Positions 1,652 to 11,486 of a stretch of DNA of 64,000 bases are shown in pieces. The notes beneath the pieces were generated by a model. The model was given only the letters and a program-made list of their open reading frames with translations. It was not told the origin of the DNA and ran no database searches. Location: positions 1 to 64,000 of IMG/VR virus record IMGVR_UViG_3300046517_002304. One strand, given 5' to 3'. Each line of letters starts with the position of its first letter. Positions within the stretch are counted from its first letter, which is position 1. Both the position numbers and the translations under genes were made by a program.

Positions 1652-2533
1652 TTAGCAGTCATCATCAGGCGGTGGTGGGGCATCAGGGATATAGCCATCA
1701 TCATCAACTGGTGGCGGAACATTCCCATAATAATATCCTTCTTCTTCAGATGGATCTGCCTTCTCCATTACAGGGGAAGTTAGCAACAATATACTAAGCT
1801 CAGAAAAATCATCGTCACTATTAGACCAAACCCAATCTAAATTTCCACTAACATCTTTAGACATGTCTTTTAATAAGTCAATAGACATCATAAAAGCAAC
1901 ATGATCTAAAGGACGGCCACTTTTGTCAATCACAAAAGCCCGAATTCCAACTAAACCATAATCCAGCCAGCTACCAGATCCGCTATCTCCGGAAATAGTC
2001 GGCACATTAATTCTATGAAAAGTGCGTTCGGATAGCGATTTACTACGATAATTCACGCCGGTGACTTCTCCGGAGTTCAGCCTAGGAACGGCTGTTCCAT
2101 CACCTAATCCAAAACTAAAAACCTTAGTCCCGATATAAAGCTTTTCGCCAAAACTTATCGTTGCAGTGCATAGCTTTTTAGGGGTTACAAAAAATACAAG
2201 AGCCATATCAGTTTCAAAATCAGCATAATAAACCCGAGCCGCATATGTGCTAGCACTATCATATTCAGACCAGTTTTTATACTGATTAACGCCAACTTTA
2301 CAAGTTAAGTCTGTATCAACAACATGAGCACATGTTAGCGCTATATTATAATAAACATCGTCTACTTTATAACTTTTTAAAACCGTACCAGTTCCCATAT
2401 GACCCTCTGCTGTTGTTATTCTAACAGTGGGGTATAGACATTTTAAATGTAAATTAATATTAGGACTAGCAGAAAATATAGGAGAAACGAAAAAACTACA
2501 GGCAACAATGATGGTTAATGCAAGTCGGCTCAA
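1652..2533 (-). CDS. Secreted trypsin-like serine protease
   Basis: Signal peptide, TCAHVV, DMAL and GDSGSG triad motifs; acidic/Pro-rich tail; TTG start with AGGAG SD. Confidence 0.8.
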   Translation of the reverse strand: MSRLALTIIVACSFFVSPIFSASPNINLHLKCLYPTVRITTAEGHMGTGTVLKSYKVDDVYYNIALTCAHVVDTDLTCKVGVNQYKNWSEYDSASTYAARVYYADFETDMALVFFVTPKKLCTATISFGEKLYIGTKVFSFGLGDGTAVPRLNSGEVTGVNYRSKSLSERTFHRINVPTISGDSGSGSWLDYGLVGIRAFVIDKSGRPLDHVAFMMSIDLLKDMSKDVSGNLDWVWSNSDDDFSELSILLLTSPVMEKADPSEEEGYYYGNVPPPVDDDGYIPDAPPPPDDDC

Positions 2534-2588
2534 ATGATACTCCTAATGAAACGATAGAATAATATATCTAAGGTTGAATAAATATTAT

Positions 2589-3251
2589 ATGACAAACAAG
2601 TATTTAGTTATAATAATCATATTATTATTGGCCGTAATCATATTTAGACACAGCAGAACCACCATTGAAGTTGGCGTTCATCAGCCTAATACAAGCGAAA
2701 AAGTAAACCTAGATCCAGCAGTGCCGAAAGAAGACGTCGTAACCGAACCGACTCCAGCAGAAACTCCCAACACAGAAGTCAAAACAGACAGTCCCCCTAT
2801 GGTAATTGCTCCGGTGCCGGTGCCTGCCCCAATCCCAGTGCCCGACACAGTACCCCCACCAAAGAGTAACGATGTGGTTTTTGTGTATAGCATGACCGAT
2901 GCTATTAAAAAATCTAAAGAATTAAACAAAAAAATATTAGTATTCTTTCACGCTCCATGGTGCGGAGCATGCGAAACAATGAAAGACTATTTTCCAGGCT
3001 CTAAGCATCCTAATAAAGATGTAAAGACCGCCATGTTAGATTACGTTGTCTTTATGTGTAATACTGACGTTGACAGGGCAATGGCTAAAAAATATGGAAT
3101 TTACGGACTCCCAACCTATATTATCATTGATGAAAATGAAAATATCATCAAAAGCGGTGTCGGAGGACTACCAGCAAGACAATTTATTAGCTGGCTAAAC
3201 ATATCTAAATCAACAAAACCTAAAGCCAGATTTAATAACTCAAGACGATAG
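2589..3251 (+). CDS. Membrane-anchored thioredoxin-family protein
   Basis: N-terminal TM helix, Pro-rich linker, WCGAC active site, cis-Pro loop GLPT. Confidence 0.85.
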   Translation: MTNKYLVIIIILLLAVIIFRHSRTTIEVGVHQPNTSEKVNLDPAVPKEDVVTEPTPAETPNTEVKTDSPPMVIAPVPVPAPIPVPDTVPPPKSNDVVFVYSMTDAIKKSKELNKKILVFFHAPWCGACETMKDYFPGSKHPNKDVKTAMLDYVVFMCNTDVDRAMAKKYGIYGLPTYIIIDENENIIKSGVGGLPARQFISWLNISKSTKPKARFNNSRR

Positions 3252-3261
3252 AAAGAACAAA

Positions 3262-3630
3262 ATGACGAACATATTAGAAAAAGAAACACAAGCTGTAATT
3301 GCTGAATGGAATGCCATAAAGCCAACCGTTGCCGCTGGAGCCAAGGCGGCGTGGAAGTCAGTATCGGGATTTATGCTTAACGCCTTAGATGTGTTCGTTA
3401 TTGCAGTAGAACCTATGATACTGGCTGGCGGCGATAAAAAAGTTGCTGTTTTAACCGCTATTTCGTTAACATATGACTCTGTTGTTGCGCCTTTAATGCC
3501 TTTTTATCTAAAACCATTTAACTCCGCTATCAAGGCATTTATCATAATGACATTAGCGTCTTCTATGATTGATTTCGTAGTAAAGCAATATAATAAAATG
3601 GGTGGCGTACCTATGCAAGCTGCGAGCTAA
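3262..3630 (+). CDS. Small hydrophobic/membrane protein (holin-like size)
   Basis: 122 aa with several hydrophobic segments; function not recognised. Confidence 0.5.
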   Translation: MTNILEKETQAVIAEWNAIKPTVAAGAKAAWKSVSGFMLNALDVFVIAVEPMILAGGDKKVAVLTAISLTYDSVVAPLMPFYLKPFNSAIKAFIIMTLASSMIDFVVKQYNKMGGVPMQAAS

Positions 3631-3634
3631 TTTA

Positions 3635-4108
3635 ATGTTTAAAACATGGCTAGAAACAGTGCAATTAGAAAAACCTTTTGTATTTCTTGATCTTGATGAA
3701 ACACTAATTCACTGTTTGGATTATCCAGATGCAGAATCTATTATAGCAAGGCCGCATTTAGAGCAATTTTTAAAATCGGCCAACAAATTCGCTAACTTAT
3801 GTATTCTAACAAGAAGTCCCAAAAAATATGCAGATGCCATCATGCATAACTTAGGGCTATCTGAGTACTTTGCCCACATATTCAGTAGCAGGGACGATAA
3901 TGATATATGTAAAAAATTAAACTTAGACAAACAAAAATGGGTATTGGTGGACAATCGCTATGCCGATTTTCCCTACACCATTGAGAAGATGGGCCAACTT
4001 GGAAACAACGGCGAGTTGATCAAAATCAAATCATGGATAGGCGATAAAAATGATAATAGATTAATGAAAATTATACCCAAAATCAAAAAAACATTAAATA
4101 TCACATAA
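3635..4108 (+). CDS. NIF/FCP1-like HAD phosphatase
   Basis: LDLDETLIH, RPHLEQFL and LVDN motifs; N-terminus MFKTWLE. Confidence 0.8.
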   Translation: MFKTWLETVQLEKPFVFLDLDETLIHCLDYPDAESIIARPHLEQFLKSANKFANLCILTRSPKKYADAIMHNLGLSEYFAHIFSSRDDNDICKKLNLDKQKWVLVDNRYADFPYTIEKMGQLGNNGELIKIKSWIGDKNDNRLMKIIPKIKKTLNIT

Positions 4109-4142
4109 GATAACTTTCCGAGCCAGAAATAATAAATATAAT

Positions 4143-5084
4143 ATGGCAAAGAAAAAATACAAAAAAAATACATGCTTCCTACCAAAGTTCACCGTAGAAC
4201 CAGTGGTTAGTATGCTAGAAGCATCCCAACGCGCAGGATGGCAAATTACTAAATTTGACTTCCCTGACGTTTGGAAATATACAAGAGGCAAAGGTGTGGT
4301 CGTCGCCGTTATTGATAGCGGCTGCGATATGGATCATGAAGATTTAAAAGACAACCTTATCCCAGGCCCTAACTTCGTTATCCCTACATCCTTGCCAGAA
4401 GATGACTGTGGCCACGGTACGCATTGCGCCAGTTTGATCGCGGCCGAGAATAATGAAGTAGGTTTGATCGGACAATCCCCAGAAGCCAAAGTAATGGTAA
4501 TTAAAACATTGGACAGAAACGGGATAGGAAATTTACAGACTGTAGCCAAGGCTATCAGGTGGGCGGTAGACAGTAAGGCCGATATAATTTCTATGTCACT
4601 AGGATGTCCTAATGAAACTCCAGAAATATATAAAGCCGTAATGTATGCCTATAGCCAGAACGTACCTATATTCTGCGCATCTGGAAACTCTGGAAACCTA
4701 AACAATATATTCTGGCCCGCAAATTATAAAGAAACAATAAGCGTATCTGCTTATGATGAAAATATGCACAGAGCGCATTTTGCCAACGTATCTCCAAATA
4801 TTAACTTCTTTGCGCCAGGGACATCGTTATTCGGAGCATATCTAAATAATGATTATACGATTATGTCTGGAACAAGCATGGCCTGCCCGATAATGGCATC
4901 TGCCGCTGCTCTGATATTATCATATAAGAGAAACTATCAAACAGATATTAAATTAAATTCTGTTGAGGACTACCGAGATATTCTAAAACAATACTGCAAG
5001 CCTATTAGCGATAACTGCTCTCAGGGATTTGGGTTCTTTAATCCAGATGTATTTTTAGAGTGGATTAAGAAACAGCCGGTCTAA
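4143..5084 (+). CDS. Subtilisin-family S8 protease
   Basis: VAVIDSG, GHGTHCA and SGTSMACP catalytic motifs; no signal peptide. Confidence 0.92.
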   Translation: MAKKKYKKNTCFLPKFTVEPVVSMLEASQRAGWQITKFDFPDVWKYTRGKGVVVAVIDSGCDMDHEDLKDNLIPGPNFVIPTSLPEDDCGHGTHCASLIAAENNEVGLIGQSPEAKVMVIKTLDRNGIGNLQTVAKAIRWAVDSKADIISMSLGCPNETPEIYKAVMYAYSQNVPIFCASGNSGNLNNIFWPANYKETISVSAYDENMHRAHFANVSPNINFFAPGTSLFGAYLNNDYTIMSGTSMACPIMASAAALILSYKRNYQTDIKLNSVEDYRDILKQYCKPISDNCSQGFGFFNPDVFLEWIKKQPV

Positions 5085-5266
5085 TCACCTAATTTTGTTT
5101 TAGGATCAATTTTATCAATTTCTATTTTGTTCGCAAATTTTTTAGGCGAACAATACTTTTGAATATCCTCTTCAGTCAAACGGCCATGACGATCTGGCGT
5201 AAGAAATTTCTGCCAGTCATGTGGTCGCCACAACTTCAAATTTTTTATGTACTGTTCTGATGCCAT
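5081..5266 (-). CDS. Hypothetical protein
   Basis: 61 aa ORF, TAATG-coupled to upstream gene. Confidence 0.55.
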   Translation of the reverse strand: MASEQYIKNLKLWRPHDWQKFLTPDRHGRLTEEDIQKYCSPKKFANKIEIDKIDPKTKLGD

Positions 5267-5772
5267 TAGTCTATTTTTACTTTCTTTGCAATCAATTCTT
5301 CCTTTAATTTTTTAAACTCGGCAACCTTTTTTTTAGTCCGCTCCTTATCATACCAAGCCTCATATAAAGACATGATTTCTTTAAAGATTTCTTTTTCTTT
5401 GCTAATGGCGGCTATTCTCTTATTATGAGCAGACAATTCCTGCTTATATTTAACATTAACCTTTGGCTGATTACACTTGAGCATAATAGAGCAACAATCA
5501 TCTTCGGGATACTCTACTGCAACAGCGTAACTTAAGATATCTTTACACTCACAGTTTTCATGAATATACTTTGAGATATCATTCATGGATATCTCATTTC
5601 CTACATAAAATGTATGAATATATCGGTAATTATTAAACACTTCAACTGGCGGAAGTGGCTGGCCCCATGGAATACTTAAATACGGAGATTTATCTGGACG
5701 AAAATTAATATACGAATATCGTTTGCGTAATTTTTCAGGCACATAAGAAGGAAATTTAATTTTATCAAACAT
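5266..5772 (-). CDS. Hypothetical protein, paralog of 5789..6271
   Basis: MFDKIKFPSYVPEKLRKRYSYINF vs MFKKFDVSNLPEHLKKDYKFINF; shared EKxIF and C-terminal FxKLKxxLxAK. Confidence 0.7.
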   Translation of the reverse strand: MFDKIKFPSYVPEKLRKRYSYINFRPDKSPYLSIPWGQPLPPVEVFNNYRYIHTFYVGNEISMNDISKYIHENCECKDILSYAVAVEYPEDDCCSIMLKCNQPKVNVKYKQELSAHNKRIAAISKEKEIFKEIMSLYEAWYDKERTKKKVAEFKKLKEELIAKKVKID

Positions 5773-5788
5773 TTTTACTCTCCACCAA

Positions 5789-6271
5789 TCAATCAATTAA
5801 CTGTTTTGCCTTTAATTTGTTTTTTAATTTATTAAACTGGGCAATCTCTGATTTGGTCTGTTCTTCTTCTACAAAGTTATTATAAGCCGCAAGCACTGCC
5901 GGAAATATCTTTTTCTCTTCCTCATATATCTCGCTATCCTTCTGATACTTCTTGAGCAGAGTTTGATACTGTGGACTTTTCACATTCTTAATGTACATTA
6001 AATTAATTTCGGTTCCGTTCAATTCATCATAATTAGAATTTAGGGCATAATGGCTAATATCCTTATCATCACGATTATTATTAATATACTCAATAATGCT
6101 TGTGATGTATACTTCTCCACTATAAAACGAATAAACGCTTTCAAGTTTTACATAAGACTCATTAGGAGGAGTAGGATTCACCATAGATGGACTGCTAAAT
6201 GAAAAATTAATAAACTTATAATCTTTTTTCAAATGCTCGGGCAAATTACTAACATCAAACTTCTTAAACAT
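5789..6271 (-). CDS. Hypothetical protein, paralog of 5266..5772
   Basis: Tandem paralogy as above. Confidence 0.7.
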   Translation of the reverse strand: MFKKFDVSNLPEHLKKDYKFINFSFSSPSMVNPTPPNESYVKLESVYSFYSGEVYITSIIEYINNNRDDKDISHYALNSNYDELNGTEINLMYIKNVKSPQYQTLLKKYQKDSEIYEEEKKIFPAVLAAYNNFVEEEQTKSEIAQFNKLKNKLKAKQLID

Positions 6272-6731
6272 TTTTCATTCTCCTAATTTCATCTCTTATT
6301 TTTGCTGCTTCTTCGTATCTTTCTTCTAAGACAGCAGCTTTCATTTTTTGTTCTAGTAATAGAATCGTCTTCTTATTATCTTTCTTTAATGGACGACGAC
6401 CCACATGAATAGTTTTTTTACAATGCTTCTGCAAAAATGGCATAATAAAATCACTAAACGCTTCATAGCACTTCGGGCACCCCAACCTACCATTTTTAGT
6501 AAAATTAAATAAAGTCATCCCACAAACGCACTCTGATCCTGGTTTCTCACTTTCTACCGGCGGCAGCTCAAACCCAACTGCATCTATTAGTTTAAAAAGC
6601 TCATCTTTCAAGCCATATTTTACGGCGCAATCACGACAAGCCGAAACTGAAGTTTTTTTGCCATCAATAATTTTAACTACAGAAAGTATTCTCGGCTTAT
6701 CGCAAGGCTCATCGGTGAATGGGCAATTCAT
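6264..6731 (-). CDS. mcsA: McsA-like activator (Zn-binding CxxC motifs plus UVR domain)
   Basis: CRDC, CVCGMT..F.K.GRLGCPKCYEAF, HVGRRP and C-terminal AVLEERYEEAAKIRDEI. Confidence 0.88.
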   Translation of the reverse strand: MNCPFTDEPCDKPRILSVVKIIDGKKTSVSACRDCAVKYGLKDELFKLIDAVGFELPPVESEKPGSECVCGMTLFNFTKNGRLGCPKCYEAFSDFIMPFLQKHCKKTIHVGRRPLKKDNKKTILLLEQKMKAAVLEERYEEAAKIRDEIRRMKNV

Positions 6732-7303
6732 TCTTTTTCCTTCGGCTTTTCATCCTGTGGAATCAATCGAAGCTTCTGGTAAACTTTAATCATTTGTTTT
6801 CTGTAAACAACACACTCTTTCTTATCCTCTTCTAAAAGAAACGCTATATTGCCTGCGATAACCTTATCTAAAAATGCAATATGCTTGCTAGCGAAATCTT
6901 TACTCAAGCTTAAATATCGTGCTGACAAATCAACAAATTCTGCACTCAAATCTCCACCATCTACTGACTGTAACTTGCTGGCCATCTGTAAATGTATTTG
7001 ATACTGCTTATATGACAACCCATAATACTTCTCAAATACCTTAAGGATATAAGCAATTTTTTCGTAATCGTCCATATCTGAAAATTTATGTTTTTTGTCA
7101 GCAGATTGATAATTCTTATAGGTATCAAAATTATCAATACCCCCCAGTACTTCGGTCATTTCTTTCAATGTAGTCTCACTAAGCTTAATAACTTTATCAA
7201 GCGCTGCTGCTTGATCGGGGGTCGGCGTAGGAGAGGCGACCAAGTAATTGGAGCTAGCAATAGAAACCACAAACAACAGAGTCATCATCATCATTTTTCG
7301 CAT
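6728..7303 (-). CDS. Secreted helical hypothetical protein
   Basis: Signal-peptide-like N-terminus; SD AGGAG upstream. Confidence 0.65.
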   Translation of the reverse strand: MRKMMMMTLLFVVSIASSNYLVASPTPTPDQAAALDKVIKLSETTLKEMTEVLGGIDNFDTYKNYQSADKKHKFSDMDDYEKIAYILKVFEKYYGLSYKQYQIHLQMASKLQSVDGGDLSAEFVDLSARYLSLSKDFASKHIAFLDKVIAGNIAFLLEEDKKECVVYRKQMIKVYQKLRLIPQDEKPKEKE

Positions 7304-8129
7304 CTCTTATCTCCTGTAAGGTTAAAACTTTGGGAAGAACATCATTAGATATTTTACTAATCTCAATTTTCTGAATACTTCTTAAAGAAGTCCGCGGTTC
7401 ACTGTTACTTTTTACTTGCTTAACCGGACAACCAGTAAAAAAATGAACCTTTTTTAACTTTTCCTGCTCTTCTATAATGTTTTTATCTAAGAAGGCATGT
7501 TGGTACGCCTCTTGCCAATAATCGTACTCATAGTCTTTAAGAATAAAATCCCCGAATCCCTGATTGGTGAAAAAGTCCTTAACTAACATGCAATCAATTC
7601 CACACTTATTGGCAATATCATAGGCAAAAGATATTATCACAGACAAAGTAAATCCTATGTCTGCTTTATTCCTGCGTGACAACTCCATAACATAATCACG
7701 CATACCACTATACGGACTATGCCAAACAAAACAATCTGATACTGCCGCCTTTTCAGCATCCCTAGAATAAAGATCAAACAAATCTCCGATATTATCAAAT
7801 CGGTATTCTGCTAATCCACTAAATTGCGGATCAAAATTGAACGTCATCCAAGCTAGCGCACATCTATGGATGCTGCCAAGACAGCAAGACTGCTTTCTAT
7901 CTACCTGATTTTCAATCTGCCGAAATTTTCTAATAATAAAATCACAAAAATCAAGTTCCGTAATTCTATGCCGGAGCTGAACCGGCAAGTTGAGATAATT
8001 TTTATCCAATTTTGCAAAGTACGAATGCAGAGCATCCAATTTACAGGCTACAATGCCAGGAAGAAGACACTTCCACTGGCCCATTAAAGCGCCATCATAT
8101 TTAATGTCGCTGATAAATCGTGCGCTCAT
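7254..8129 (-). CDS. Hypothetical protein
   Basis: 291 aa ORF in a co-oriented run. Confidence 0.65.
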   Translation of the reverse strand: MSARFISDIKYDGALMGQWKCLLPGIVACKLDALHSYFAKLDKNYLNLPVQLRHRITELDFCDFIIRKFRQIENQVDRKQSCCLGSIHRCALAWMTFNFDPQFSGLAEYRFDNIGDLFDLYSRDAEKAAVSDCFVWHSPYSGMRDYVMELSRRNKADIGFTLSVIISFAYDIANKCGIDCMLVKDFFTNQGFGDFILKDYEYDYWQEAYQHAFLDKNIIEEQEKLKKVHFFTGCPVKQVKSNSEPRTSLRSIQKIEISKISNDVLPKVLTLQEIRDAKNDDDDSVVCGFYC

Positions 8130-8134
8130 TATTT

Positions 8135-8935
8135 TTACGGAAACACGGTGCCTTGGATTTGTAAAGTGGCCGAATCAGACGGCAGGGCCGCAGATCCCGC
8201 AGGTGTGACTCTTTTTAGCCAAAGAGGAAATCCTTCTTCGGCCCTCAATGTTGCTATTGTAATAGATCCGCTGGTAAATACAACCCCAGTTGGGGTAGTT
8301 GCGACATTTCCAGTGCTCTGAGCAATATCATTTCTTGGACCACCTTCTGTTATCGTGCTCATAGTTGGATTGGGTACAGATGGGGTCAAAGCATTCGTAT
8401 CTACCACCAAAAGATTTTGATTTCTATTGCCGTCATCACCGGTAAATGTTATTGTGTAATTAGAGCCACTTGAATGAGCACAAGAAACCTGTGACAAACC
8501 AGCGGTTCCATTCAACCCAGCCTGCAAATTTACGGCAAAAACTGACGGCGTATTGTCCCAGTTGATCTGGGGAGATAAAGCGTTTTCGTATTTTAGCACT
8601 AAATTTCCACCTGTTGGCGACCCATTTATCGCAATTCGCTGAACCTCATTTCTTGCTAAAACTCCAATAGTAATAGTAGAACCGCCAGCAATCTGGGATT
8701 GCAAAGAAACAGAAACATTGTAGAATACATCCGTTGAATTGTTATTAAATACGTAAATACAGCGATAGTCAGTATACCCGCTTTGAGCCTGTGCGGCAGT
8801 CACATTAGTGAACAAGTTATTCAGCGTTGTTCCGACTGCATGCGAACTAGGTTGCCCACCAAAAGAAAGAGCCGGATTAGTATTGCTTGAACCCCCTGAA
8901 AGCACTATGCTAATATCCGAAGCCATAATCGTCAT
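8135..8935 (-). CDS. Probable virion structural protein
   Basis: S/T/G/N-rich beta-type composition, NNLFxNVT..DYRCIYVFN and FPLWLKR; TAAATA box upstream. Confidence 0.6.
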   Translation of the reverse strand: MTIMASDISIVLSGGSSNTNPALSFGGQPSSHAVGTTLNNLFTNVTAAQAQSGYTDYRCIYVFNNNSTDVFYNVSVSLQSQIAGGSTITIGVLARNEVQRIAINGSPTGGNLVLKYENALSPQINWDNTPSVFAVNLQAGLNGTAGLSQVSCAHSSGSNYTITFTGDDGNRNQNLLVVDTNALTPSVPNPTMSTITEGGPRNDIAQSTGNVATTPTGVVFTSGSITIATLRAEEGFPLWLKRVTPAGSAALPSDSATLQIQGTVFP

Positions 8936-8961
8936 ACCTTATTTACCCTGAGAGGTTGAAA

Positions 8962-9855
8962 ATGCCAGACGAAGAAACAAAGGAACTCAAAATTACGTGG
9001 CAGCCTCGTAAAGGCGGGAAGCCATCCCAGATTTACACCACAGGGCTTGAATACTGCTTTATCAACAGCGAAAATCAACAGTGCCATGAATTTGTTTACT
9101 GCAAAGACTTCCTACATGACGCGGTTCATGCTTTTTTGTACGAAAAAGTCGCGGACATTTATGACTTCGTTTACGACCCCAAGAGCATGCCTCCCCTCAT
9201 GCTTTCTAGGACAAAAATTGCGCTAAGCAATGCGTCCGACAAAAATTTTGTCAGTAAAATGGATAATATGGTTGACTTCATCAACCAATGTGAGGTAAAA
9301 TTAAAACTCAAGAAGTCTAGGGGAATCCTTTGTAGTAACCCGCCAAAACAATATAAAAACGGTATTATAGTTTTAAGAGGTTCAGCTAAGTGGATAGAAG
9401 CGCCTCCAATGCTATCTTTATATACTCTTCTTATTAGAATAGGGTTTATCCATAAAAAGGGCGATAGTTATACCCAGACTATGGACGCTTTAATCAATGG
9501 ATCGGTTAAACCATATCAAAAAAATGATACCAGCTACCTCTCAAGCGCCAAGAAAAGTGTTGACAGGATTCTTGAAGAAGGGTATAGAAAAATATTCTAC
9601 AGCGATATCAAGCGAAATTATCCAAAAAATGTAGACATTGGAACGCTACACAACAGCTTCGGTATTGTCGGGTTCACTAGCAAATCTCCCAAACAATGGG
9701 TTCCAGGCTGGTGGAAATCTAAGAAAAAGAAAATCACTACCGCTGAAGCTGCGGCAGCTAACCCAGACGATTATTATATTGATTGCGAAATGGGACTGAC
9801 CAAAAAAGAAACCGCCAAACCGGAAACCATTAAAACAGAGGTGGCAAATGCCTAA
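8962..9855 (+). CDS. Hypothetical protein coupled to the COOH-NH2 ligase
   Basis: Overlaps the start of the downstream ligase; CKDFLHD motif. Confidence 0.65.
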   Translation: MPDEETKELKITWQPRKGGKPSQIYTTGLEYCFINSENQQCHEFVYCKDFLHDAVHAFLYEKVADIYDFVYDPKSMPPLMLSRTKIALSNASDKNFVSKMDNMVDFINQCEVKLKLKKSRGILCSNPPKQYKNGIIVLRGSAKWIEAPPMLSLYTLLIRIGFIHKKGDSYTQTMDALINGSVKPYQKNDTSYLSSAKKSVDRILEEGYRKIFYSDIKRNYPKNVDIGTLHNSFGIVGFTSKSPKQWVPGWWKSKKKKITTAEAAAANPDDYYIDCEMGLTKKETAKPETIKTEVANA

Positions 9856-10735
9856 ATCTTGGACAATCGGACATGATGTTGAATTTACGGTCTTTGACCC
9901 GAAAAGTAAGAAAATCAGAAGTGCTATCGGGGTAGTTCCTGGCAGCAAGGAATGCCCTTATGACCTCGGGGACGGCCATCGGGCTTTCTACGACAATGTG
10001 CTGGCAGAATGTAACTTAAAAGTTAGCAATTCCAAAGAAGATTTTATAGCAAATAACAAGGAATGTTTTCAGCGATATGCAGATGCAATTAAGCCGTGTG
10101 TTTTACTGCCGAAAGCATCCCACACATATCCGGCATCAGAACTTCAGCACGAAGATGCCTTAAAGTTTGGCTGCGATCAATCTTTTGATGCTTATACCGT
10201 CGCCCCAAATCCACCGCCCGACTGTCAGCCCGGTAATGGCTTCCGAACCGGGGGTGGTCATATTCACCTTGGTGGCGATTTCTTCCCCTTAAACGACGAC
10301 TGGGGGCGTATATGGGTCATTAGAATGATGGATATCTTCTTTGGAGTTCCGTCACTGTTTATTGACCAAGATCCAACGTCTATGGTAAGACGCAAGCTGT
10401 ATGGTGGAGCAGGGGATCATCGTCCGCAAGTCTACGGAGTTGAGTACAGGTCACCATCCAATTTCTGGGTAGCTACTCCTCAACTGGTCGCACTCACATA
10501 TGATATCTGTGATTTTGTGCTGGATGTCTGCATTAACGAGCAACATGAAGAAATTTATAATCTTCATGAAGACAATATCGTGAAATGCATCAATAATTGG
10601 GACAAAAAGGCGGCAAAACCCTTTATGGAAATATGCCGAAGACTAATGCCCAAAAAACTATGGGAAAACGTTGAGCAACTCTCTAAGCCGCGAGAAGACA
10701 AGTCGTTCTACGAGAGCTGGGGAATCAAGGCTTAG
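9848..10735 (+). CDS. phiEco32-like COOH-NH2 ligase type 2
   Basis: IGHDVEF, DNVLAE, FGCD, FRTGGGHIHLG, RRKLYGGAG and GVEYRSPSNFW motifs. Confidence 0.85.
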   Translation: MPKSWTIGHDVEFTVFDPKSKKIRSAIGVVPGSKECPYDLGDGHRAFYDNVLAECNLKVSNSKEDFIANNKECFQRYADAIKPCVLLPKASHTYPASELQHEDALKFGCDQSFDAYTVAPNPPPDCQPGNGFRTGGGHIHLGGDFFPLNDDWGRIWVIRMMDIFFGVPSLFIDQDPTSMVRRKLYGGAGDHRPQVYGVEYRSPSNFWVATPQLVALTYDICDFVLDVCINEQHEEIYNLHEDNIVKCINNWDKKAAKPFMEICRRLMPKKLWENVEQLSKPREDKSFYESWGIKA

Positions 10736-10752
10736 TCAAAATAATAGGCAAA

Positions 10753-10819
10753 TAGCCCAAACTGGCAATTAGCAAGTTTATTCCTTTCCTTATCTTTTTT
10801 ATACGGCCAGTTTGGGCTA
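10753..10819. repeat. Perfect 14-bp inverted repeat with 39-nt loop
   Basis: TAGCCCAAACTGGC (10753-10766) / GCCAGTTTGGGCTA (10806-10819). Confidence 0.9.
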
Positions 10820-10838
10820 CCAACCAACGGAGAAAAAC

Positions 10839-11486
10839 GTGCCAAAAAATCTAATCGGGAAATGGATAGTTGATGCGCCTGAGAACATAGAGCGGTGCAT
10901 CATCGCCTTCCCAGGAAGGGGAGGATCGGCTGAAAGTATGATGAGTCTTTGTCGTGCCATAAGGTTGCCGGATACATTGATTATATGCTTACAATCTAGA
11001 TATTTTGCTTGGTACGCATCTCCAAATGGAGCCAATGATCAATATGATGCTGTGCAAAGCATGAAGAATGCTATAAAAGAAATAACAAATACAATTAATA
11101 AAATAAAAGACTTTTGGGGAGTGTCGGACAACCAAATCGCCTTGCTTGGACATAGTGCTGGTAGCGTTGTCTCAATTCAAACTGCGCTAAACTTCAATTT
11201 CCGTGCGGTTATTTCCCTTGCCGGTGCTATTTTAGAGCCGGAAAAAATGCCGATATGCGCTATAGACACTCAATTTTTGCTTCAACACGACACTAATGAT
11301 GACTGCTTTTCTTGGGATGAACGATTCGTGCCAATGCATGACGCTCTAAAAACAAACAAGTATCATACAGAAATATGTATAGACAGAGGAAATGGGCATG
11401 ATTCATTTACGAACGAAGTCGTAGACTATGTGCAATCATTTCTAACTGAGAAGTTCAAAATTACCGCAGAAAGCGAAGAGTCCTAA
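10839..11486 (+). CDS. Alpha/beta hydrolase (carboxylesterase/phospholipase-like)
   Basis: PGRGG oxyanion loop, GHSAG nucleophile, C-terminal D and GH; GTG start after GGAG. Confidence 0.8.
   Translation: MPKNLIGKWIVDAPENIERCIIAFPGRGGSAESMMSLCRAIRLPDTLIICLQSRYFAWYASPNGANDQYDAVQSMKNAIKEITNTINKIKDFWGVSDNQIALLGHSAGSVVSIQTALNFNFRAVISLAGAILEPEKMPICAIDTQFLLQHDTNDDCFSWDERFVPMHDALKTNKYHTEICIDRGNGHDSFTNEVVDYVQSFLTEKFKITAESEES

What the first reader, a model, noticed from the sequence alone, without database searches (positions are those of the whole stretch)
6264..6731. Phage-borne McsA without McsB or ClpC nearby
Seen: a complete McsA architecture with a modified first Cys pair (CPFTDEPC). Known: McsA activates the protein arginine kinase McsB, which tags proteins for ClpCP, and it normally sits in a ctsR-mcsA-mcsB-clpC operon. 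Inference: the phage tunes host pArg/ClpC proteolysis, and the host belongs to an McsAB-containing lineage (Bacillota, PVC and others).
Basis: partly seen in the sequence, partly recalled or inferred. Interest (0 to 1): 0.6.

Follow-up and report, generated by a model that had tools for sequence, protein, structure and literature searches.

The report
Orphan McsA-like gene in huge phage
A complete 511-kb soil phage carries a stand-alone, virus-specific version of McsA, the zinc-finger subunit that switches on the bacterial protein-arginine kinase McsB, so a whole clade of huge phages probably interferes with the host's phospho-arginine tagging of proteins for degradation.

Summary
Window 6264..6731 (-) encodes a 155-aa protein with the full McsA layout: zinc domain Z1, zinc domain Z2, loop L3 and a UVR coiled coil. 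It matches the NCBIfam McsA model, solved McsA chains and the McsA fold.

The window belongs to a complete 511,233-bp tailed-phage genome. That genome has no McsB kinase domain, no ClpC and no pArg phosphatase, but it does have its own ClpX and a ClpP-like gene.

The "modified first Cys pair" is not a quirk of this gene. A 4-residue insert (Cx6C) marks a virus-specific McsA clade of at least 20 sequence clusters. Members lie on huge-phage contigs, including GenBank LR756511.1 (595 kb), in conserved synteny and always without McsB. Only 1 of 185,579 prokaryotic species genomes carries the motif, and that contig looks like a phage contig.

All eight Zn-ligand Cys and the core McsB-contact residues are conserved in the clade. 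A complex model with a Verrucomicrobia-type McsB kinase domain scored 0.81 (best control 0.01) at the crystallographic interface.

Most likely the protein binds and re-programmes host McsB. Whether it activates or blocks the kinase is open, and the host is unknown. The nearest cellular McsAs are PVC, but one relative sits in an Acidobacteriota MAG, a phylum without McsB in 151 sampled genomes. I found no published phage McsA.

The parts
6264..6731 (-). McsA-like ORF, 155 aa (P0001); the stop codon is at 6264-6266
6618..6731 (-). Z1 zinc-ribbon domain (residues 1-38). Ligands are C3, C10, C32 and C35. The first pair is Cx6C because of a 4-residue insert that marks the phage clade.
   Evidence: Alignments: the insert is absent in 197 of 198 bacterial McsAs, and the Cys are 16/16 in the clade. 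AF2 pLDDT is 88-90.
6423..6542 (-). Z2 zinc domain (residues 64-103). It has C68-x-C70 and the G81-R82-L83-G84-C85-x2-C88-Y89 core. This is the McsB-binding domain.
   Evidence: alignment to 8wtb_B; contact list in PMC11046695; conservation; predicted interface
6378..6422 (-). L3 loop (residues 104-118) with T107, H109, G111, R112 and P114. This is the second McsB-contacting element.
6267..6377 (-). C-terminal helical hairpin (coiled coil) holding the UVR motif (residues 119-155)
   Evidence: Pfam UVR E 1e-8; helices 119-135 and 139-154 with pLDDT 93-98
6728..7303 (-). Upstream gene, 191 aa, with an N-terminal signal peptide. Its stop overlaps the McsA start (ATGA). It belongs to a family found directly upstream of the McsA-like gene in five related phage loci.
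   Evidence: no known family or fold
7254..8129 (-). 291-aa ORF of unknown function. It is inserted in this phage between the conserved 266-aa gene and the exported-protein gene.
   Evidence: No Pfam or PHROG match; no tblastn match in related loci
8135..8935 (-). 266-aa protein of a virus-only family, weakly like tail-tube proteins. It heads the same-strand gene run that contains the McsA-like gene and is syntenic in all relatives.
5266..6271 (-). Two tandem paralogous genes (160 and 176 aa, 32% identical) directly downstream. The first overlaps the McsA stop.
   Evidence: no family
4143..5084 (+). Subtilisin-like S8 peptidase, a syntenic neighbour of the McsA-like gene in related phages
8956..11486 (+). 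Conserved syntenic block: a 299-aa unknown protein, a phiEco32-like COOH-NH2 ligase (9848..10735) and an alpha/beta hydrolase (10812..11486)

Best explanation
The gene encodes a virus-adapted McsA. During infection the protein docks its Z2 zinc domain and L3 loop onto the kinase domain of the host's protein-arginine kinase McsB. This is the crevice used by cellular McsA. It thereby takes over control of host arginine phosphorylation, the pArg mark that ClpC-ClpP reads as a degradation signal.

It keeps the elements that suffice for activation in B. subtilis: Z2, the R-[L/F]-G loop that touches the catalytic loop, and L3. I therefore think it more likely activates or re-targets McsB than blocks it. 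The virus-specific Z1 (Cx6C) and the coiled coil would then change holoenzyme assembly or substrate choice.

Shown: homology, domain layout, conservation, orphan status, clade-wide vertical inheritance and purifying selection.

Inferred: binding to host McsB (in-silico support only), the direction of the effect, the benefit to the phage, and that the host has McsB.
For: 1. Homology to McsA by sequence, profile and fold.
2. The closest cellular homologues sit in mcsA-mcsB(-clpC) operons, so the family assignment is sound.
3. PMC11046695 shows that Z2 plus L3 bind McsB-KD and suffice for activation. Of its 17 contact residues, 7 are identical and 4 conservative in the phage protein (alignment).
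4. In 16 phage-clade members all 8 Zn Cys, G81, G84, Y89, H109, G111 and P114 are invariant, and R82, L83 and K/R112 nearly so.
5. Complex prediction of residues 60-155 with a Verrucomicrobia-type McsB kinase domain gave ipSAE 0.81, 0.80 and 0.81. The best of 3 controls was 0.01. The runs agree in at least 93% of contacts and partner pLDDT is at least 77. In calibration the mark was reached by 51 of 78 solved complexes and 2 of 108 mismatched pairs. The interface uses McsA 70-115 and McsB 34-43, 141-171 and 225-231, which are the lambda1-3 loops of the crystal structure.
6. The gene is kept in a deep huge-phage clade, with members only about 30% identical to this protein, in conserved synteny. 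dN/dS is 0.15 for one pair.
7. No McsB is present in this genome or in five related phage records, including the complete 595-kb LR756511.1. The partner must therefore come from the cell.
8. McsA-like genes with the ordinary CxxC Z1 also occur, without McsB within the fetched flanks, on one further IMG/VR contig and on one likely viral contig.
Against: - The host is unknown.
- One clade member lies on a contig binned into a 'Chloracidobacterium sp.' MAG with matching GC. None of 151 sampled genomes of that phylum has a McsB kinase domain or a full McsA. One of those genomes, G025, is unpublished, and the tally does not depend on it. If that binning reflects the host, McsB is not the target.
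- The complex score may be memory of 8WTB/8WTC. It shows likeness, not binding.
- The score against the curated McsA model is far below its equivalog cut-off.
- The Cx6C and CxC spacings could alter zinc binding.
- There are no expression data; no RNA run holds the locus.
- With Z1 left out, the placement of this protein in the clade is unresolved, although one clade is not rejected (AU p 0.74).
Confidence: 0.55

Rival explanations
1. Decoy or inhibitor. The phage protein occupies the McsA site on host McsB but, because of its altered Z1, does not build a productive McsAB oligomer or hand over to ClpC. It thus shuts down pArg tagging, protecting phage proteins or blocking a stress or abortive response.
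For: It shares the binding evidence of the best explanation. In B. subtilis, Z1 and the coiled coil are needed for the large McsAB oligomer, and Z1 deletion cuts autophosphorylation by about 75%. Z1 is exactly the part that is virus-specific.
Against: Z2L3 alone activates McsB in vitro. The activating R-L-G loop and L3 are intact, and Z1 and the coiled coil are retained and conserved rather than lost.
Confidence: 0.2
2. McsB-independent function. The McsA scaffold has been re-used in these phages for another partner, in hosts that may lack McsB. Candidates are the phage ClpX/ClpP-like proteins, host ClpC through the UVR coiled coil, the translationally coupled exported protein, or the syntenic COOH-NH2 ligase.
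For: - A clade member sits in an Acidobacteriota MAG whose phylum lacks McsA and McsB in 151 sampled genomes.
- Coupling to a conserved exported protein is constant.
- The phage has ClpX and a ClpP-like protein.
- UVR-domain proteins are enriched among plastid ClpC1 interactors (PMC8889267).
- The COOH-NH2 ligase is syntenic in most relatives. By my own knowledge, untested here, it has a glutamine-synthetase/guanido-kinase-type fold.
Against: - The residues kept invariant are precisely the McsB-contact residues.
- MAG binning is weak host evidence.
- The complete relative LR756511.1 has the McsA-like gene but no PF14395 ligase match, and the same search rings on this genome.
- The 266-aa and 191-aa neighbours show no kinase-like family or fold.
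Confidence: 0.2
3. Non-functional passenger: a captured host gene that is decaying, with the odd Cys spacings as signs of decay.
For: The score is below the equivalog cut-off. There are two non-canonical Cys spacings.
Against: The frame is intact with tight operon packing. The Cx6C spacing is conserved in at least 16 diverged relatives with all ligand Cys kept. Synteny is conserved and dN/dS is 0.15.
Confidence: 0.03

Closest known systems
Cellular McsA (protein-arginine kinase activator; B. subtilis McsA, PDB 8WTB/8WTC; PVC-type McsA in mcsA-mcsB-clpC operons)
   Same: It has the same four-part layout (Z1, Z2, L3, UVR coiled coil), eight Cys ligands, the G-R-L-G-C-x2-C-Y core and the H-x-G-K/R-x-P loop. 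Identity to Verrucomicrobia, Planctomycetes and Omnitrophota McsAs is 33-39%. The fold matches solved McsA, and the predicted docking site on McsB is the same.
   Different: It is encoded by a phage with no mcsB or clpC partner gene. Z1 carries a 4-residue insert (Cx6C), and the first Z2 pair is CxC. It is shorter (155 aa) and scores below the curated equivalog cut-off. It belongs to a separate virus-only clade.
SPO1 Gp53, phage adaptor-like protein that binds ClpC (PMC6873191)
   Same: It is a phage protein that re-programmes the host ClpC-ClpP degradation pathway for phage development.
   Different: Gp53 binds the ClpC N-domain and linker directly and is unrelated in sequence to host adaptors. 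The protein here is a true homologue of the kinase's regulatory subunit and would act one step upstream, on substrate tagging.
Other phage-borne orphan McsA-like genes with canonical CxxC Z1 (IMG/VR 3300037264_002228, locus L012; protein P0005 on a 59-kb contig)
   Same: They are stand-alone McsA-like genes with no McsB or ClpC within the fetched flanks. P0005 shares the CxC in Z2 and is the nearest sequence over Z2 to the C-terminus, at 46% identity.
   Different: They lack the Cx6C insert and the synteny of the huge-phage clade. These are probably independent captures. The viral nature of the P0005 contig is likely but not shown.
UvrB/UvrC and other UVR-motif proteins
   Same: They share the roughly 35-residue UVR helical hairpin.
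   Different: There is no helicase or nuclease domain here, and matches to UvrB/UvrC models cover only the last 40 residues, far below their cut-offs. Many phage UVR proteins found in the first scan are not McsA.

Membership tests
McsA (protein-arginine kinase activator) | N-terminal Cys4 zinc domain Z1 | tested here: met
   C3, C10, C32 and C35 are present and invariant in the clade. The spacing of the first pair is Cx6C instead of CxxC. The region folds confidently as a zinc-ribbon-like hairpin. Zinc binding itself was not measured.
McsA (protein-arginine kinase activator) | Second Cys4 zinc domain Z2 with the G-R-[LF]-G-C-x2-C-Y core | tested here: met
   C68, C70, C85 and C88 plus G81-R82-L83-G84 and Y89 are present. 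The first pair is CxC.
McsA (protein-arginine kinase activator) | L3 loop (H-x-G-K/R-x-P) that contacts McsB | tested here: met
   H109, G111, R112 and P114 are present. They are invariant or nearly so in phage and bacterial sets.
McsA (protein-arginine kinase activator) | C-terminal UVR coiled coil | tested here: met
   Pfam UVR E 1e-8; two helices with pLDDT above 93
McsA (protein-arginine kinase activator) | Score above the curated NCBIfam equivalog cut-off (NF053706) | tested here: not met
   78.7 bits against a cut-off of 210, although E is 4.4e-22 over nearly the full length. By its name, the model was built for the Bacilli type.
McsA (protein-arginine kinase activator) | Fold like solved McsA | tested here: met
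   The top Foldseek matches are 8wtb_B and 8wtc_B/D (prob 1.00, E 6e-5 to 1e-4), followed by 8gqd_E. The high rmsd reflects the flexible hinge between Z2 and the coiled coil.
McsA (protein-arginine kinase activator) | Encoded next to mcsB (usually also clpC) | tested here: not met
   No PF00217 and no tblastn match in the 511-kb genome, nor in five related phage records. Cellular homologues do have the operon.
McsA (protein-arginine kinase activator) | Binds the McsB kinase domain and raises its activity | not testable with these tools
   There is in-silico support only. ipSAE was 0.81 against a best control of 0.01, at the crystallographic interface. This may reflect memory of 8WTB/8WTC.
UvrB/UvrC excinuclease subunits | Helicase or nuclease domains in addition to the UVR motif | tested here: not met
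   The protein is only 155 aa. UvrB/UvrC models match residues ~105-154 only, at 15-19 bits against cut-offs of 285-1504.

The most novel reading that the evidence does not exclude
The phage McsA forms a hybrid holoenzyme with the host's McsB. It uses its virus-specific Z1 domain to redirect phospho-arginine tagging onto host proteins chosen by the phage, such as defence or regulatory proteins. This would be a bacterial-virus counterpart of the way eukaryotic viruses hijack ubiquitin ligases. It would be conserved across a clade of huge phages and would operate outside the Gram-positive bacteria where pArg signalling has been studied.
Probability: 0.2. Interest if true: 0.8.

Novelty: new variant of a known kind. 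Interest (0 to 1): 0.55.

Why it matters
Phospho-arginine tagging by McsAB is the bacterial analogue of ubiquitin marking, and it has been studied almost only in Bacillota. A regulatory subunit carried alone by phages would be the first viral factor acting at the tagging step. The known SPO1 Gp53 acts at the unfoldase instead.

Three things make this testable and potentially useful:
- The gene is conserved across a huge-phage clade from soil, rhizosphere and mud.
- It has its own structural signature.
- It offers a natural McsB-directed probe, gives a functional hint for hosts of uncultured huge phages (they should carry mcsB), and points to pArg signalling mattering in PVC-type bacteria.

Tried and rejected
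- **First viral scan.** The scan with the full alignment used the UVR motif as its pattern. Of 20 loci, only L012 encodes an McsA-like protein; the rest are other UVR-motif proteins.
- **GenBank 'phage' hits.** MT836804.1 is a bacterial mcsA-mcsB-clpC operon. The short Listeria and Staphylococcus 'phage' records are probably host DNA; that is inferred from their size and was not checked.
- **PHROGs.** No family matches the protein.
- **Hidden kinase next door.** The 266-aa neighbour belongs to a virus-only, tail-tube-like family. The 191-aa neighbour has no convincing family or fold. The 291-aa ORF has no relatives in the related loci.
- **COOH-NH2 ligase as alternative partner.** The complete relative LR756511.1 has no PF14395 match, and the positive control on this genome rang.
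- **pArg phosphatase (LMW-PTP) or ClpC N-domain in the phage.** None found.
- **Host from the literature.** Al-Shayeb et al. 2020 list LR756511.1 as SR-VP_PHAGE_COMPLETE_CIR-CU-CL_42_23. Its profile is 82% unknown, with Proteobacteria 4.0%, Parcubacteria 2.3% and Planctomycetes 2.2%. That is inconclusive.
- **Host from the terminase.** The only close GenBank relative is that same uncultured phage.
- **Host from a MAG.** Ambiguous.
- **Expression.** No RNA run holds the locus.
- **dN/dS.** Copies from other samples are DNA-identical. Two of three clade pairs are saturated.
- **Not run.** The one complex job went to McsB, so ClpX, ClpC, the exported protein and the ligase could not be tested as partners.

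Full report
**1. What is at the coordinates**

Window 6264..6731 on the minus strand is an intact ORF of 155 codons. Its ATG lies in an ATGA overlap with the stop of the upstream gene (6728..7303). Its last 8 bases overlap the start of the downstream gene (5789..6271). It therefore sits inside a tightly packed same-strand gene run, 8935 to 5081.

- Pfam finds a UVR motif at residues 123-154, E 1e-8.
- The NCBIfam McsA model NF053706 matches residues 11-153 at E 4.4e-22. The score is 78.7 bits, below the equivalog cut-off of 210.
- Against PDB sequences the best match is B. subtilis McsA (8wtb_B, E 2e-16), then S. aureus McsA (8gqd_E).
- An AlphaFold2 model built on 46 homologues has mean pLDDT 84. 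It shows an N-terminal beta-hairpin zinc ribbon, a disordered linker (residues 58-62), a small helical domain and a C-terminal helical hairpin.
- Its best matches among solved structures are the McsA chains of the McsA/McsB complexes, prob 1.00.

The Cys pattern is C3-x6-C10 ... C32-x2-C35 and C68-x-C70 ... C85-x2-C88.

**2. The genome**

The window is the first 64 kb of a 511,233-bp IMG/VR virus record with a 127-bp terminal repeat and a CheckV completeness of 100%. It has 39% GC, four tRNAs and 92% coding density under the standard code. It encodes a Terminase_6N-type large terminase. That terminase's only close GenBank relative is the uncultured 595-kb phage LR756511.1, at 42.9% identity; the next hits are T4-like myoviruses at about 33%. 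Near-identical DNA is present in six soil and rhizosphere runs, none of them RNA.

The genome has none of the following:
- a McsB kinase domain (PF00217, E up to 1);
- a tblastn match to two PVC McsB or ClpC proteins, beyond weak AAA+ similarity;
- a Clp_N domain or an LMW-PTP.

It does encode a ClpX (zf-C4_ClpX plus AAA_2, 404 aa, at 437745-438959) and a ClpP-family protein (499913-500512).

**3. Relatives**

With the single sequence, the best non-self hits are 33-39% identical proteins of 150-200 aa. Those that carry names are from Verrucomicrobia, Planctomycetes and Omnitrophota, plus one from Selenomonadales. Two of them (P0002, P0007) lie directly upstream of mcsB and clpC. A third (P0063) lies upstream of mcsB. 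These are genuine McsAs.

A viral-contig scan keyed on the Z2 core found three further IMG/VR contigs (L035, L036, L037). Their proteins begin with the same unusual knuckle, C-P-[FLI]-[TS]-x-x-P-C. A profile of the viral proteins then pulled out about 20 further clusters with this Cx6C start. They score well above all bacterial McsAs and include proteins on contigs of 149 kb and 669,797 bp.

- In a tree of 227 sequences, the 16 Cx6C rows form one clade together with four rows that either lack the N-terminal start of the motif or carry a variant N-terminus. Support is 94, and this protein is included.
- With Z1 removed from the data, 15 of the 16 stay together (SH-aLRT 94). This protein becomes unresolved, but holding all 16 together is not rejected; that tree even has the higher likelihood (AU p 0.74).

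Synteny settles orthology. In this phage, L035-L038, L045 and L050, the McsA-like gene lies in the same block:
- alpha/beta hydrolase,
- phiEco32-like COOH-NH2 ligase,
- a ~260-300-aa unknown protein,
- a ~270-aa virus-only protein,
- a ~200-aa exported protein,
- the McsA-like gene,
- then an S8 peptidase or a trypsin-like peptidase nearby.

LR756511.1 also has a Cx6C McsA-like gene. It is preceded by the exported-protein gene and by paralogues of the virus-only protein.

A strict DNA motif for the Cx6C knuckle gave these counts:
- Seven IMG/VR contigs of 32-341 kb.
- One contig among 185,579 prokaryotic species genomes. That contig, in a 'Chloracidobacterium sp.' MAG, carries the phage block.

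None of five related phage records has PF00217. Two other McsA-like genes with an ordinary CxxC Z1 lie on a 98-kb IMG/VR contig (L012) and on a 59-kb, mostly ORFan contig (P0005). Neither has McsB or ClpC in the flanks.

I found no paper describing a phage-encoded McsA, and PHROGs has no family for it.

**4. Is the McsB-binding function kept?**

The B. subtilis McsA/McsB-KD structure shows three things (PMC11046695):
- Z2 and loop L3 make the contacts with three loops of the kinase domain.
- Z2L3 alone activates the kinase and dissolves McsB self-oligomers.
- Z1 and the coiled coil drive the large McsAB oligomer.

Mapping the 17 listed contact residues through the alignment gives this split:
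- 7 identical: C70, R82, G84, Y89, H103, T107, H109.
- 4 conservative: N76, L83, R112, K116.
- 6 different.

In 16 phage-clade proteins all eight ligand Cys, G81, G84, Y89, H109, G111 and P114 are invariant, and R82, L83 and K/R112 nearly so. The same holds in 198 bacterial McsAs. The 4-residue Z1 insert is absent from 197 of those 198. One clade pair gives dN/dS 0.15.

The one complex job paired residues 60-155 with the kinase domain (residues 1-265) of the McsB encoded next to P0007.
- ipSAE was 0.81, 0.80 and 0.81, and the best of three controls was 0.01.
- The runs agree in at least 93% of contacts, and partner pLDDT is at least 77.
- In calibration the mark was reached by 51 of 78 solved complexes and 2 of 108 mismatched pairs.
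- The interface uses McsA 70, 72, 81-86, 89, 96-115 and McsB 34-43, 141-171 and 225-231. These are the crystallographic lambda1-3 crevice.

Because a like complex is solved, this pass shows likeness of the surface. It does not show that this copy binds.

**5. Mechanism**

The simplest reading is a xenogeneic regulatory subunit. The phage supplies McsA, the cell supplies McsB, and ClpC-ClpP reads the pArg marks.

The activating parts are intact, and Z1 and the coiled coil are kept, so I favour activation or re-targeting (0.55 for McsB-directed action with this polarity). A decoy that blocks the host McsA site comes next (0.2).

A McsB-independent role (0.2) stays open, mainly because of the MAG contig. 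Its GC matches the MAG. In 151 sampled genomes of that phylum there is no McsB kinase domain and no full-length McsA apart from that contig; the other hits are only the UVR motif of UvrB or UvrC. One of the 151, G025, is unpublished and the tally does not rest on it. Binning is weak host evidence, but if it is right, McsB cannot be the target there.

Candidate alternative partners:
- The syntenic COOH-NH2 ligase is not universal. LR756511.1 lacks a PF14395 match, while the same search rings on this genome.
- The neighbours show no kinase-like features.

Decay of a captured gene is disfavoured by the conservation data.

**6. Host**

- The nearest cellular McsAs are PVC-type.
- Chlamydia, a PVC member, has McsAB, and its ClpC needs pArg substrates (PMC10128030).
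- The phage tRNAs read AGA, UUA and AUG. That would fit a host with higher GC than the phage; this is my inference.
- The published taxonomic profile for the related phage LR756511.1 was inconclusive.
- The clade spans 36-57% GC, so it probably infects several hosts.

The host therefore remains open. The model predicts that it carries mcsB.

**7. Comparison and verdict**

The protein is an McsA homologue by layout, motifs and fold. It fails two membership criteria: the curated equivalog score and operon linkage with mcsB. It also carries a clade-specific Z1 insert. I therefore file it as a virus-specific variant of the McsA family.

The closest functional precedent on the phage side is SPO1 Gp53, which binds ClpC directly (PMC6873191). 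The protein here would act one step earlier, at tagging.

Novelty: new variant of a known kind. Interest: 0.55.

Noticed in passing
window 6728..7303 (-); also L035 4761-5381, L036 7058-7720, L037 7084-7719, L038 6368-7000, L041 7195-7719: A family of ~175-220-aa proteins with N-terminal signal peptides and a conserved C-terminal motif (H-D-K-x-K-L-I-E-R in most members). It always lies directly upstream of the phage McsA-like gene, with the two genes abutting or overlapping (stop and start overlap in four of the six loci). It has no known family or fold. Why an exported protein is coupled to a cytoplasmic-type zinc-finger protein is unexplained.
   Followed up: partly
window 8135..8935 (-): 266-aa protein with an N-terminal S-G-G-x-x-N-x-x-P-x-x-S-x-G-G motif. 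It belongs to a virus-only (Uroviricota) family with weak tail-tube-like structure matches. It is syntenic in all relatives and is present in two or three copies next to the McsA-like gene in LR756511.1 and in two IMG/VR contigs.
   Followed up: partly
window 5266..5796 and 5789..6271 (-): Two tandem paralogues (32% identity, E 7e-22) of unknown function lie directly downstream of the McsA-like gene. No homologues were found in the related phage loci.
   Followed up: partly
window 1652..5084: A cluster of proteostasis, redox and signalling genes lies beside the McsA-like gene: a trypsin-like peptidase (1652..2533), a thioredoxin-like protein (2574..3251), a NIF/FCP1-like HAD phosphatase (3602..4108) and an S8 subtilase (4143..5084). 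The S8 and trypsin-like genes are syntenic in relatives.
   Followed up: partly
G000 437745-438959 (-) and 499913-500512 (-), outside the window: The phage encodes its own ClpX (ClpX zinc finger plus AAA_2 plus D2-small) and a ClpP-family protein. The latter could instead be a prohead protease.
   Followed up: partly
L042 (GenBank MT836804.1, 'UNVERIFIED: Bacteriophage sp.', 8.7 kb): This 'phage' record is a bacterial mcsA-mcsB-clpC operon: McsB is 39% and ClpC 51% identical to the Verrucomicrobia-type proteins. It is not evidence for phage-borne McsA.
   Followed up: yes
L050 / L055 (JAYVUD010000002.1, MAG 'Chloracidobacterium sp.', contig 69.8 kb): This contig carries the huge-phage block (hydrolase, COOH-NH2 ligase, virus-only 270-aa protein, Cx6C McsA-like) and is binned into an Acidobacteriota MAG of matching GC (55%). 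It is either a mis-binned phage contig or a host hint.
   Followed up: partly
alignment of 198 bacterial (mostly PVC) McsAs, column of B. subtilis C102; also L012 7944-8423: Half of the bacterial McsAs (99 of 198) and the L012 viral protein have Asp instead of the fourth Z2 Cys (C-P-x-D-Y), so a Cys3-Asp site seems common outside Bacillota. The Cx6C phage clade keeps Cys in all 16.
   Followed up: no
L013-L031 (IMG/VR contigs): Many unrelated phage proteins of 110-270 aa end in a near-perfect UVR motif (Y-E-E-A-A-x-I-R-D) without any McsA zinc domain. Their role is unknown.
   Followed up: no
IMG/VR records behind L036, L048, L049: Three large relatives (343, 341 and 187 kb) are labelled 'provirus' at 37-69% completeness. 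The L036 protein also occurs on a 669,797-bp metagenome contig. The label may come from trimming of a huge phage genome rather than from integration.
   Followed up: no
window 7254..8129 (-): A 291-aa ORF with no family and no counterpart in related phages is inserted between the conserved virus-only gene and the exported-protein gene. Its end overlaps the next gene by 50 nt.
   Followed up: no
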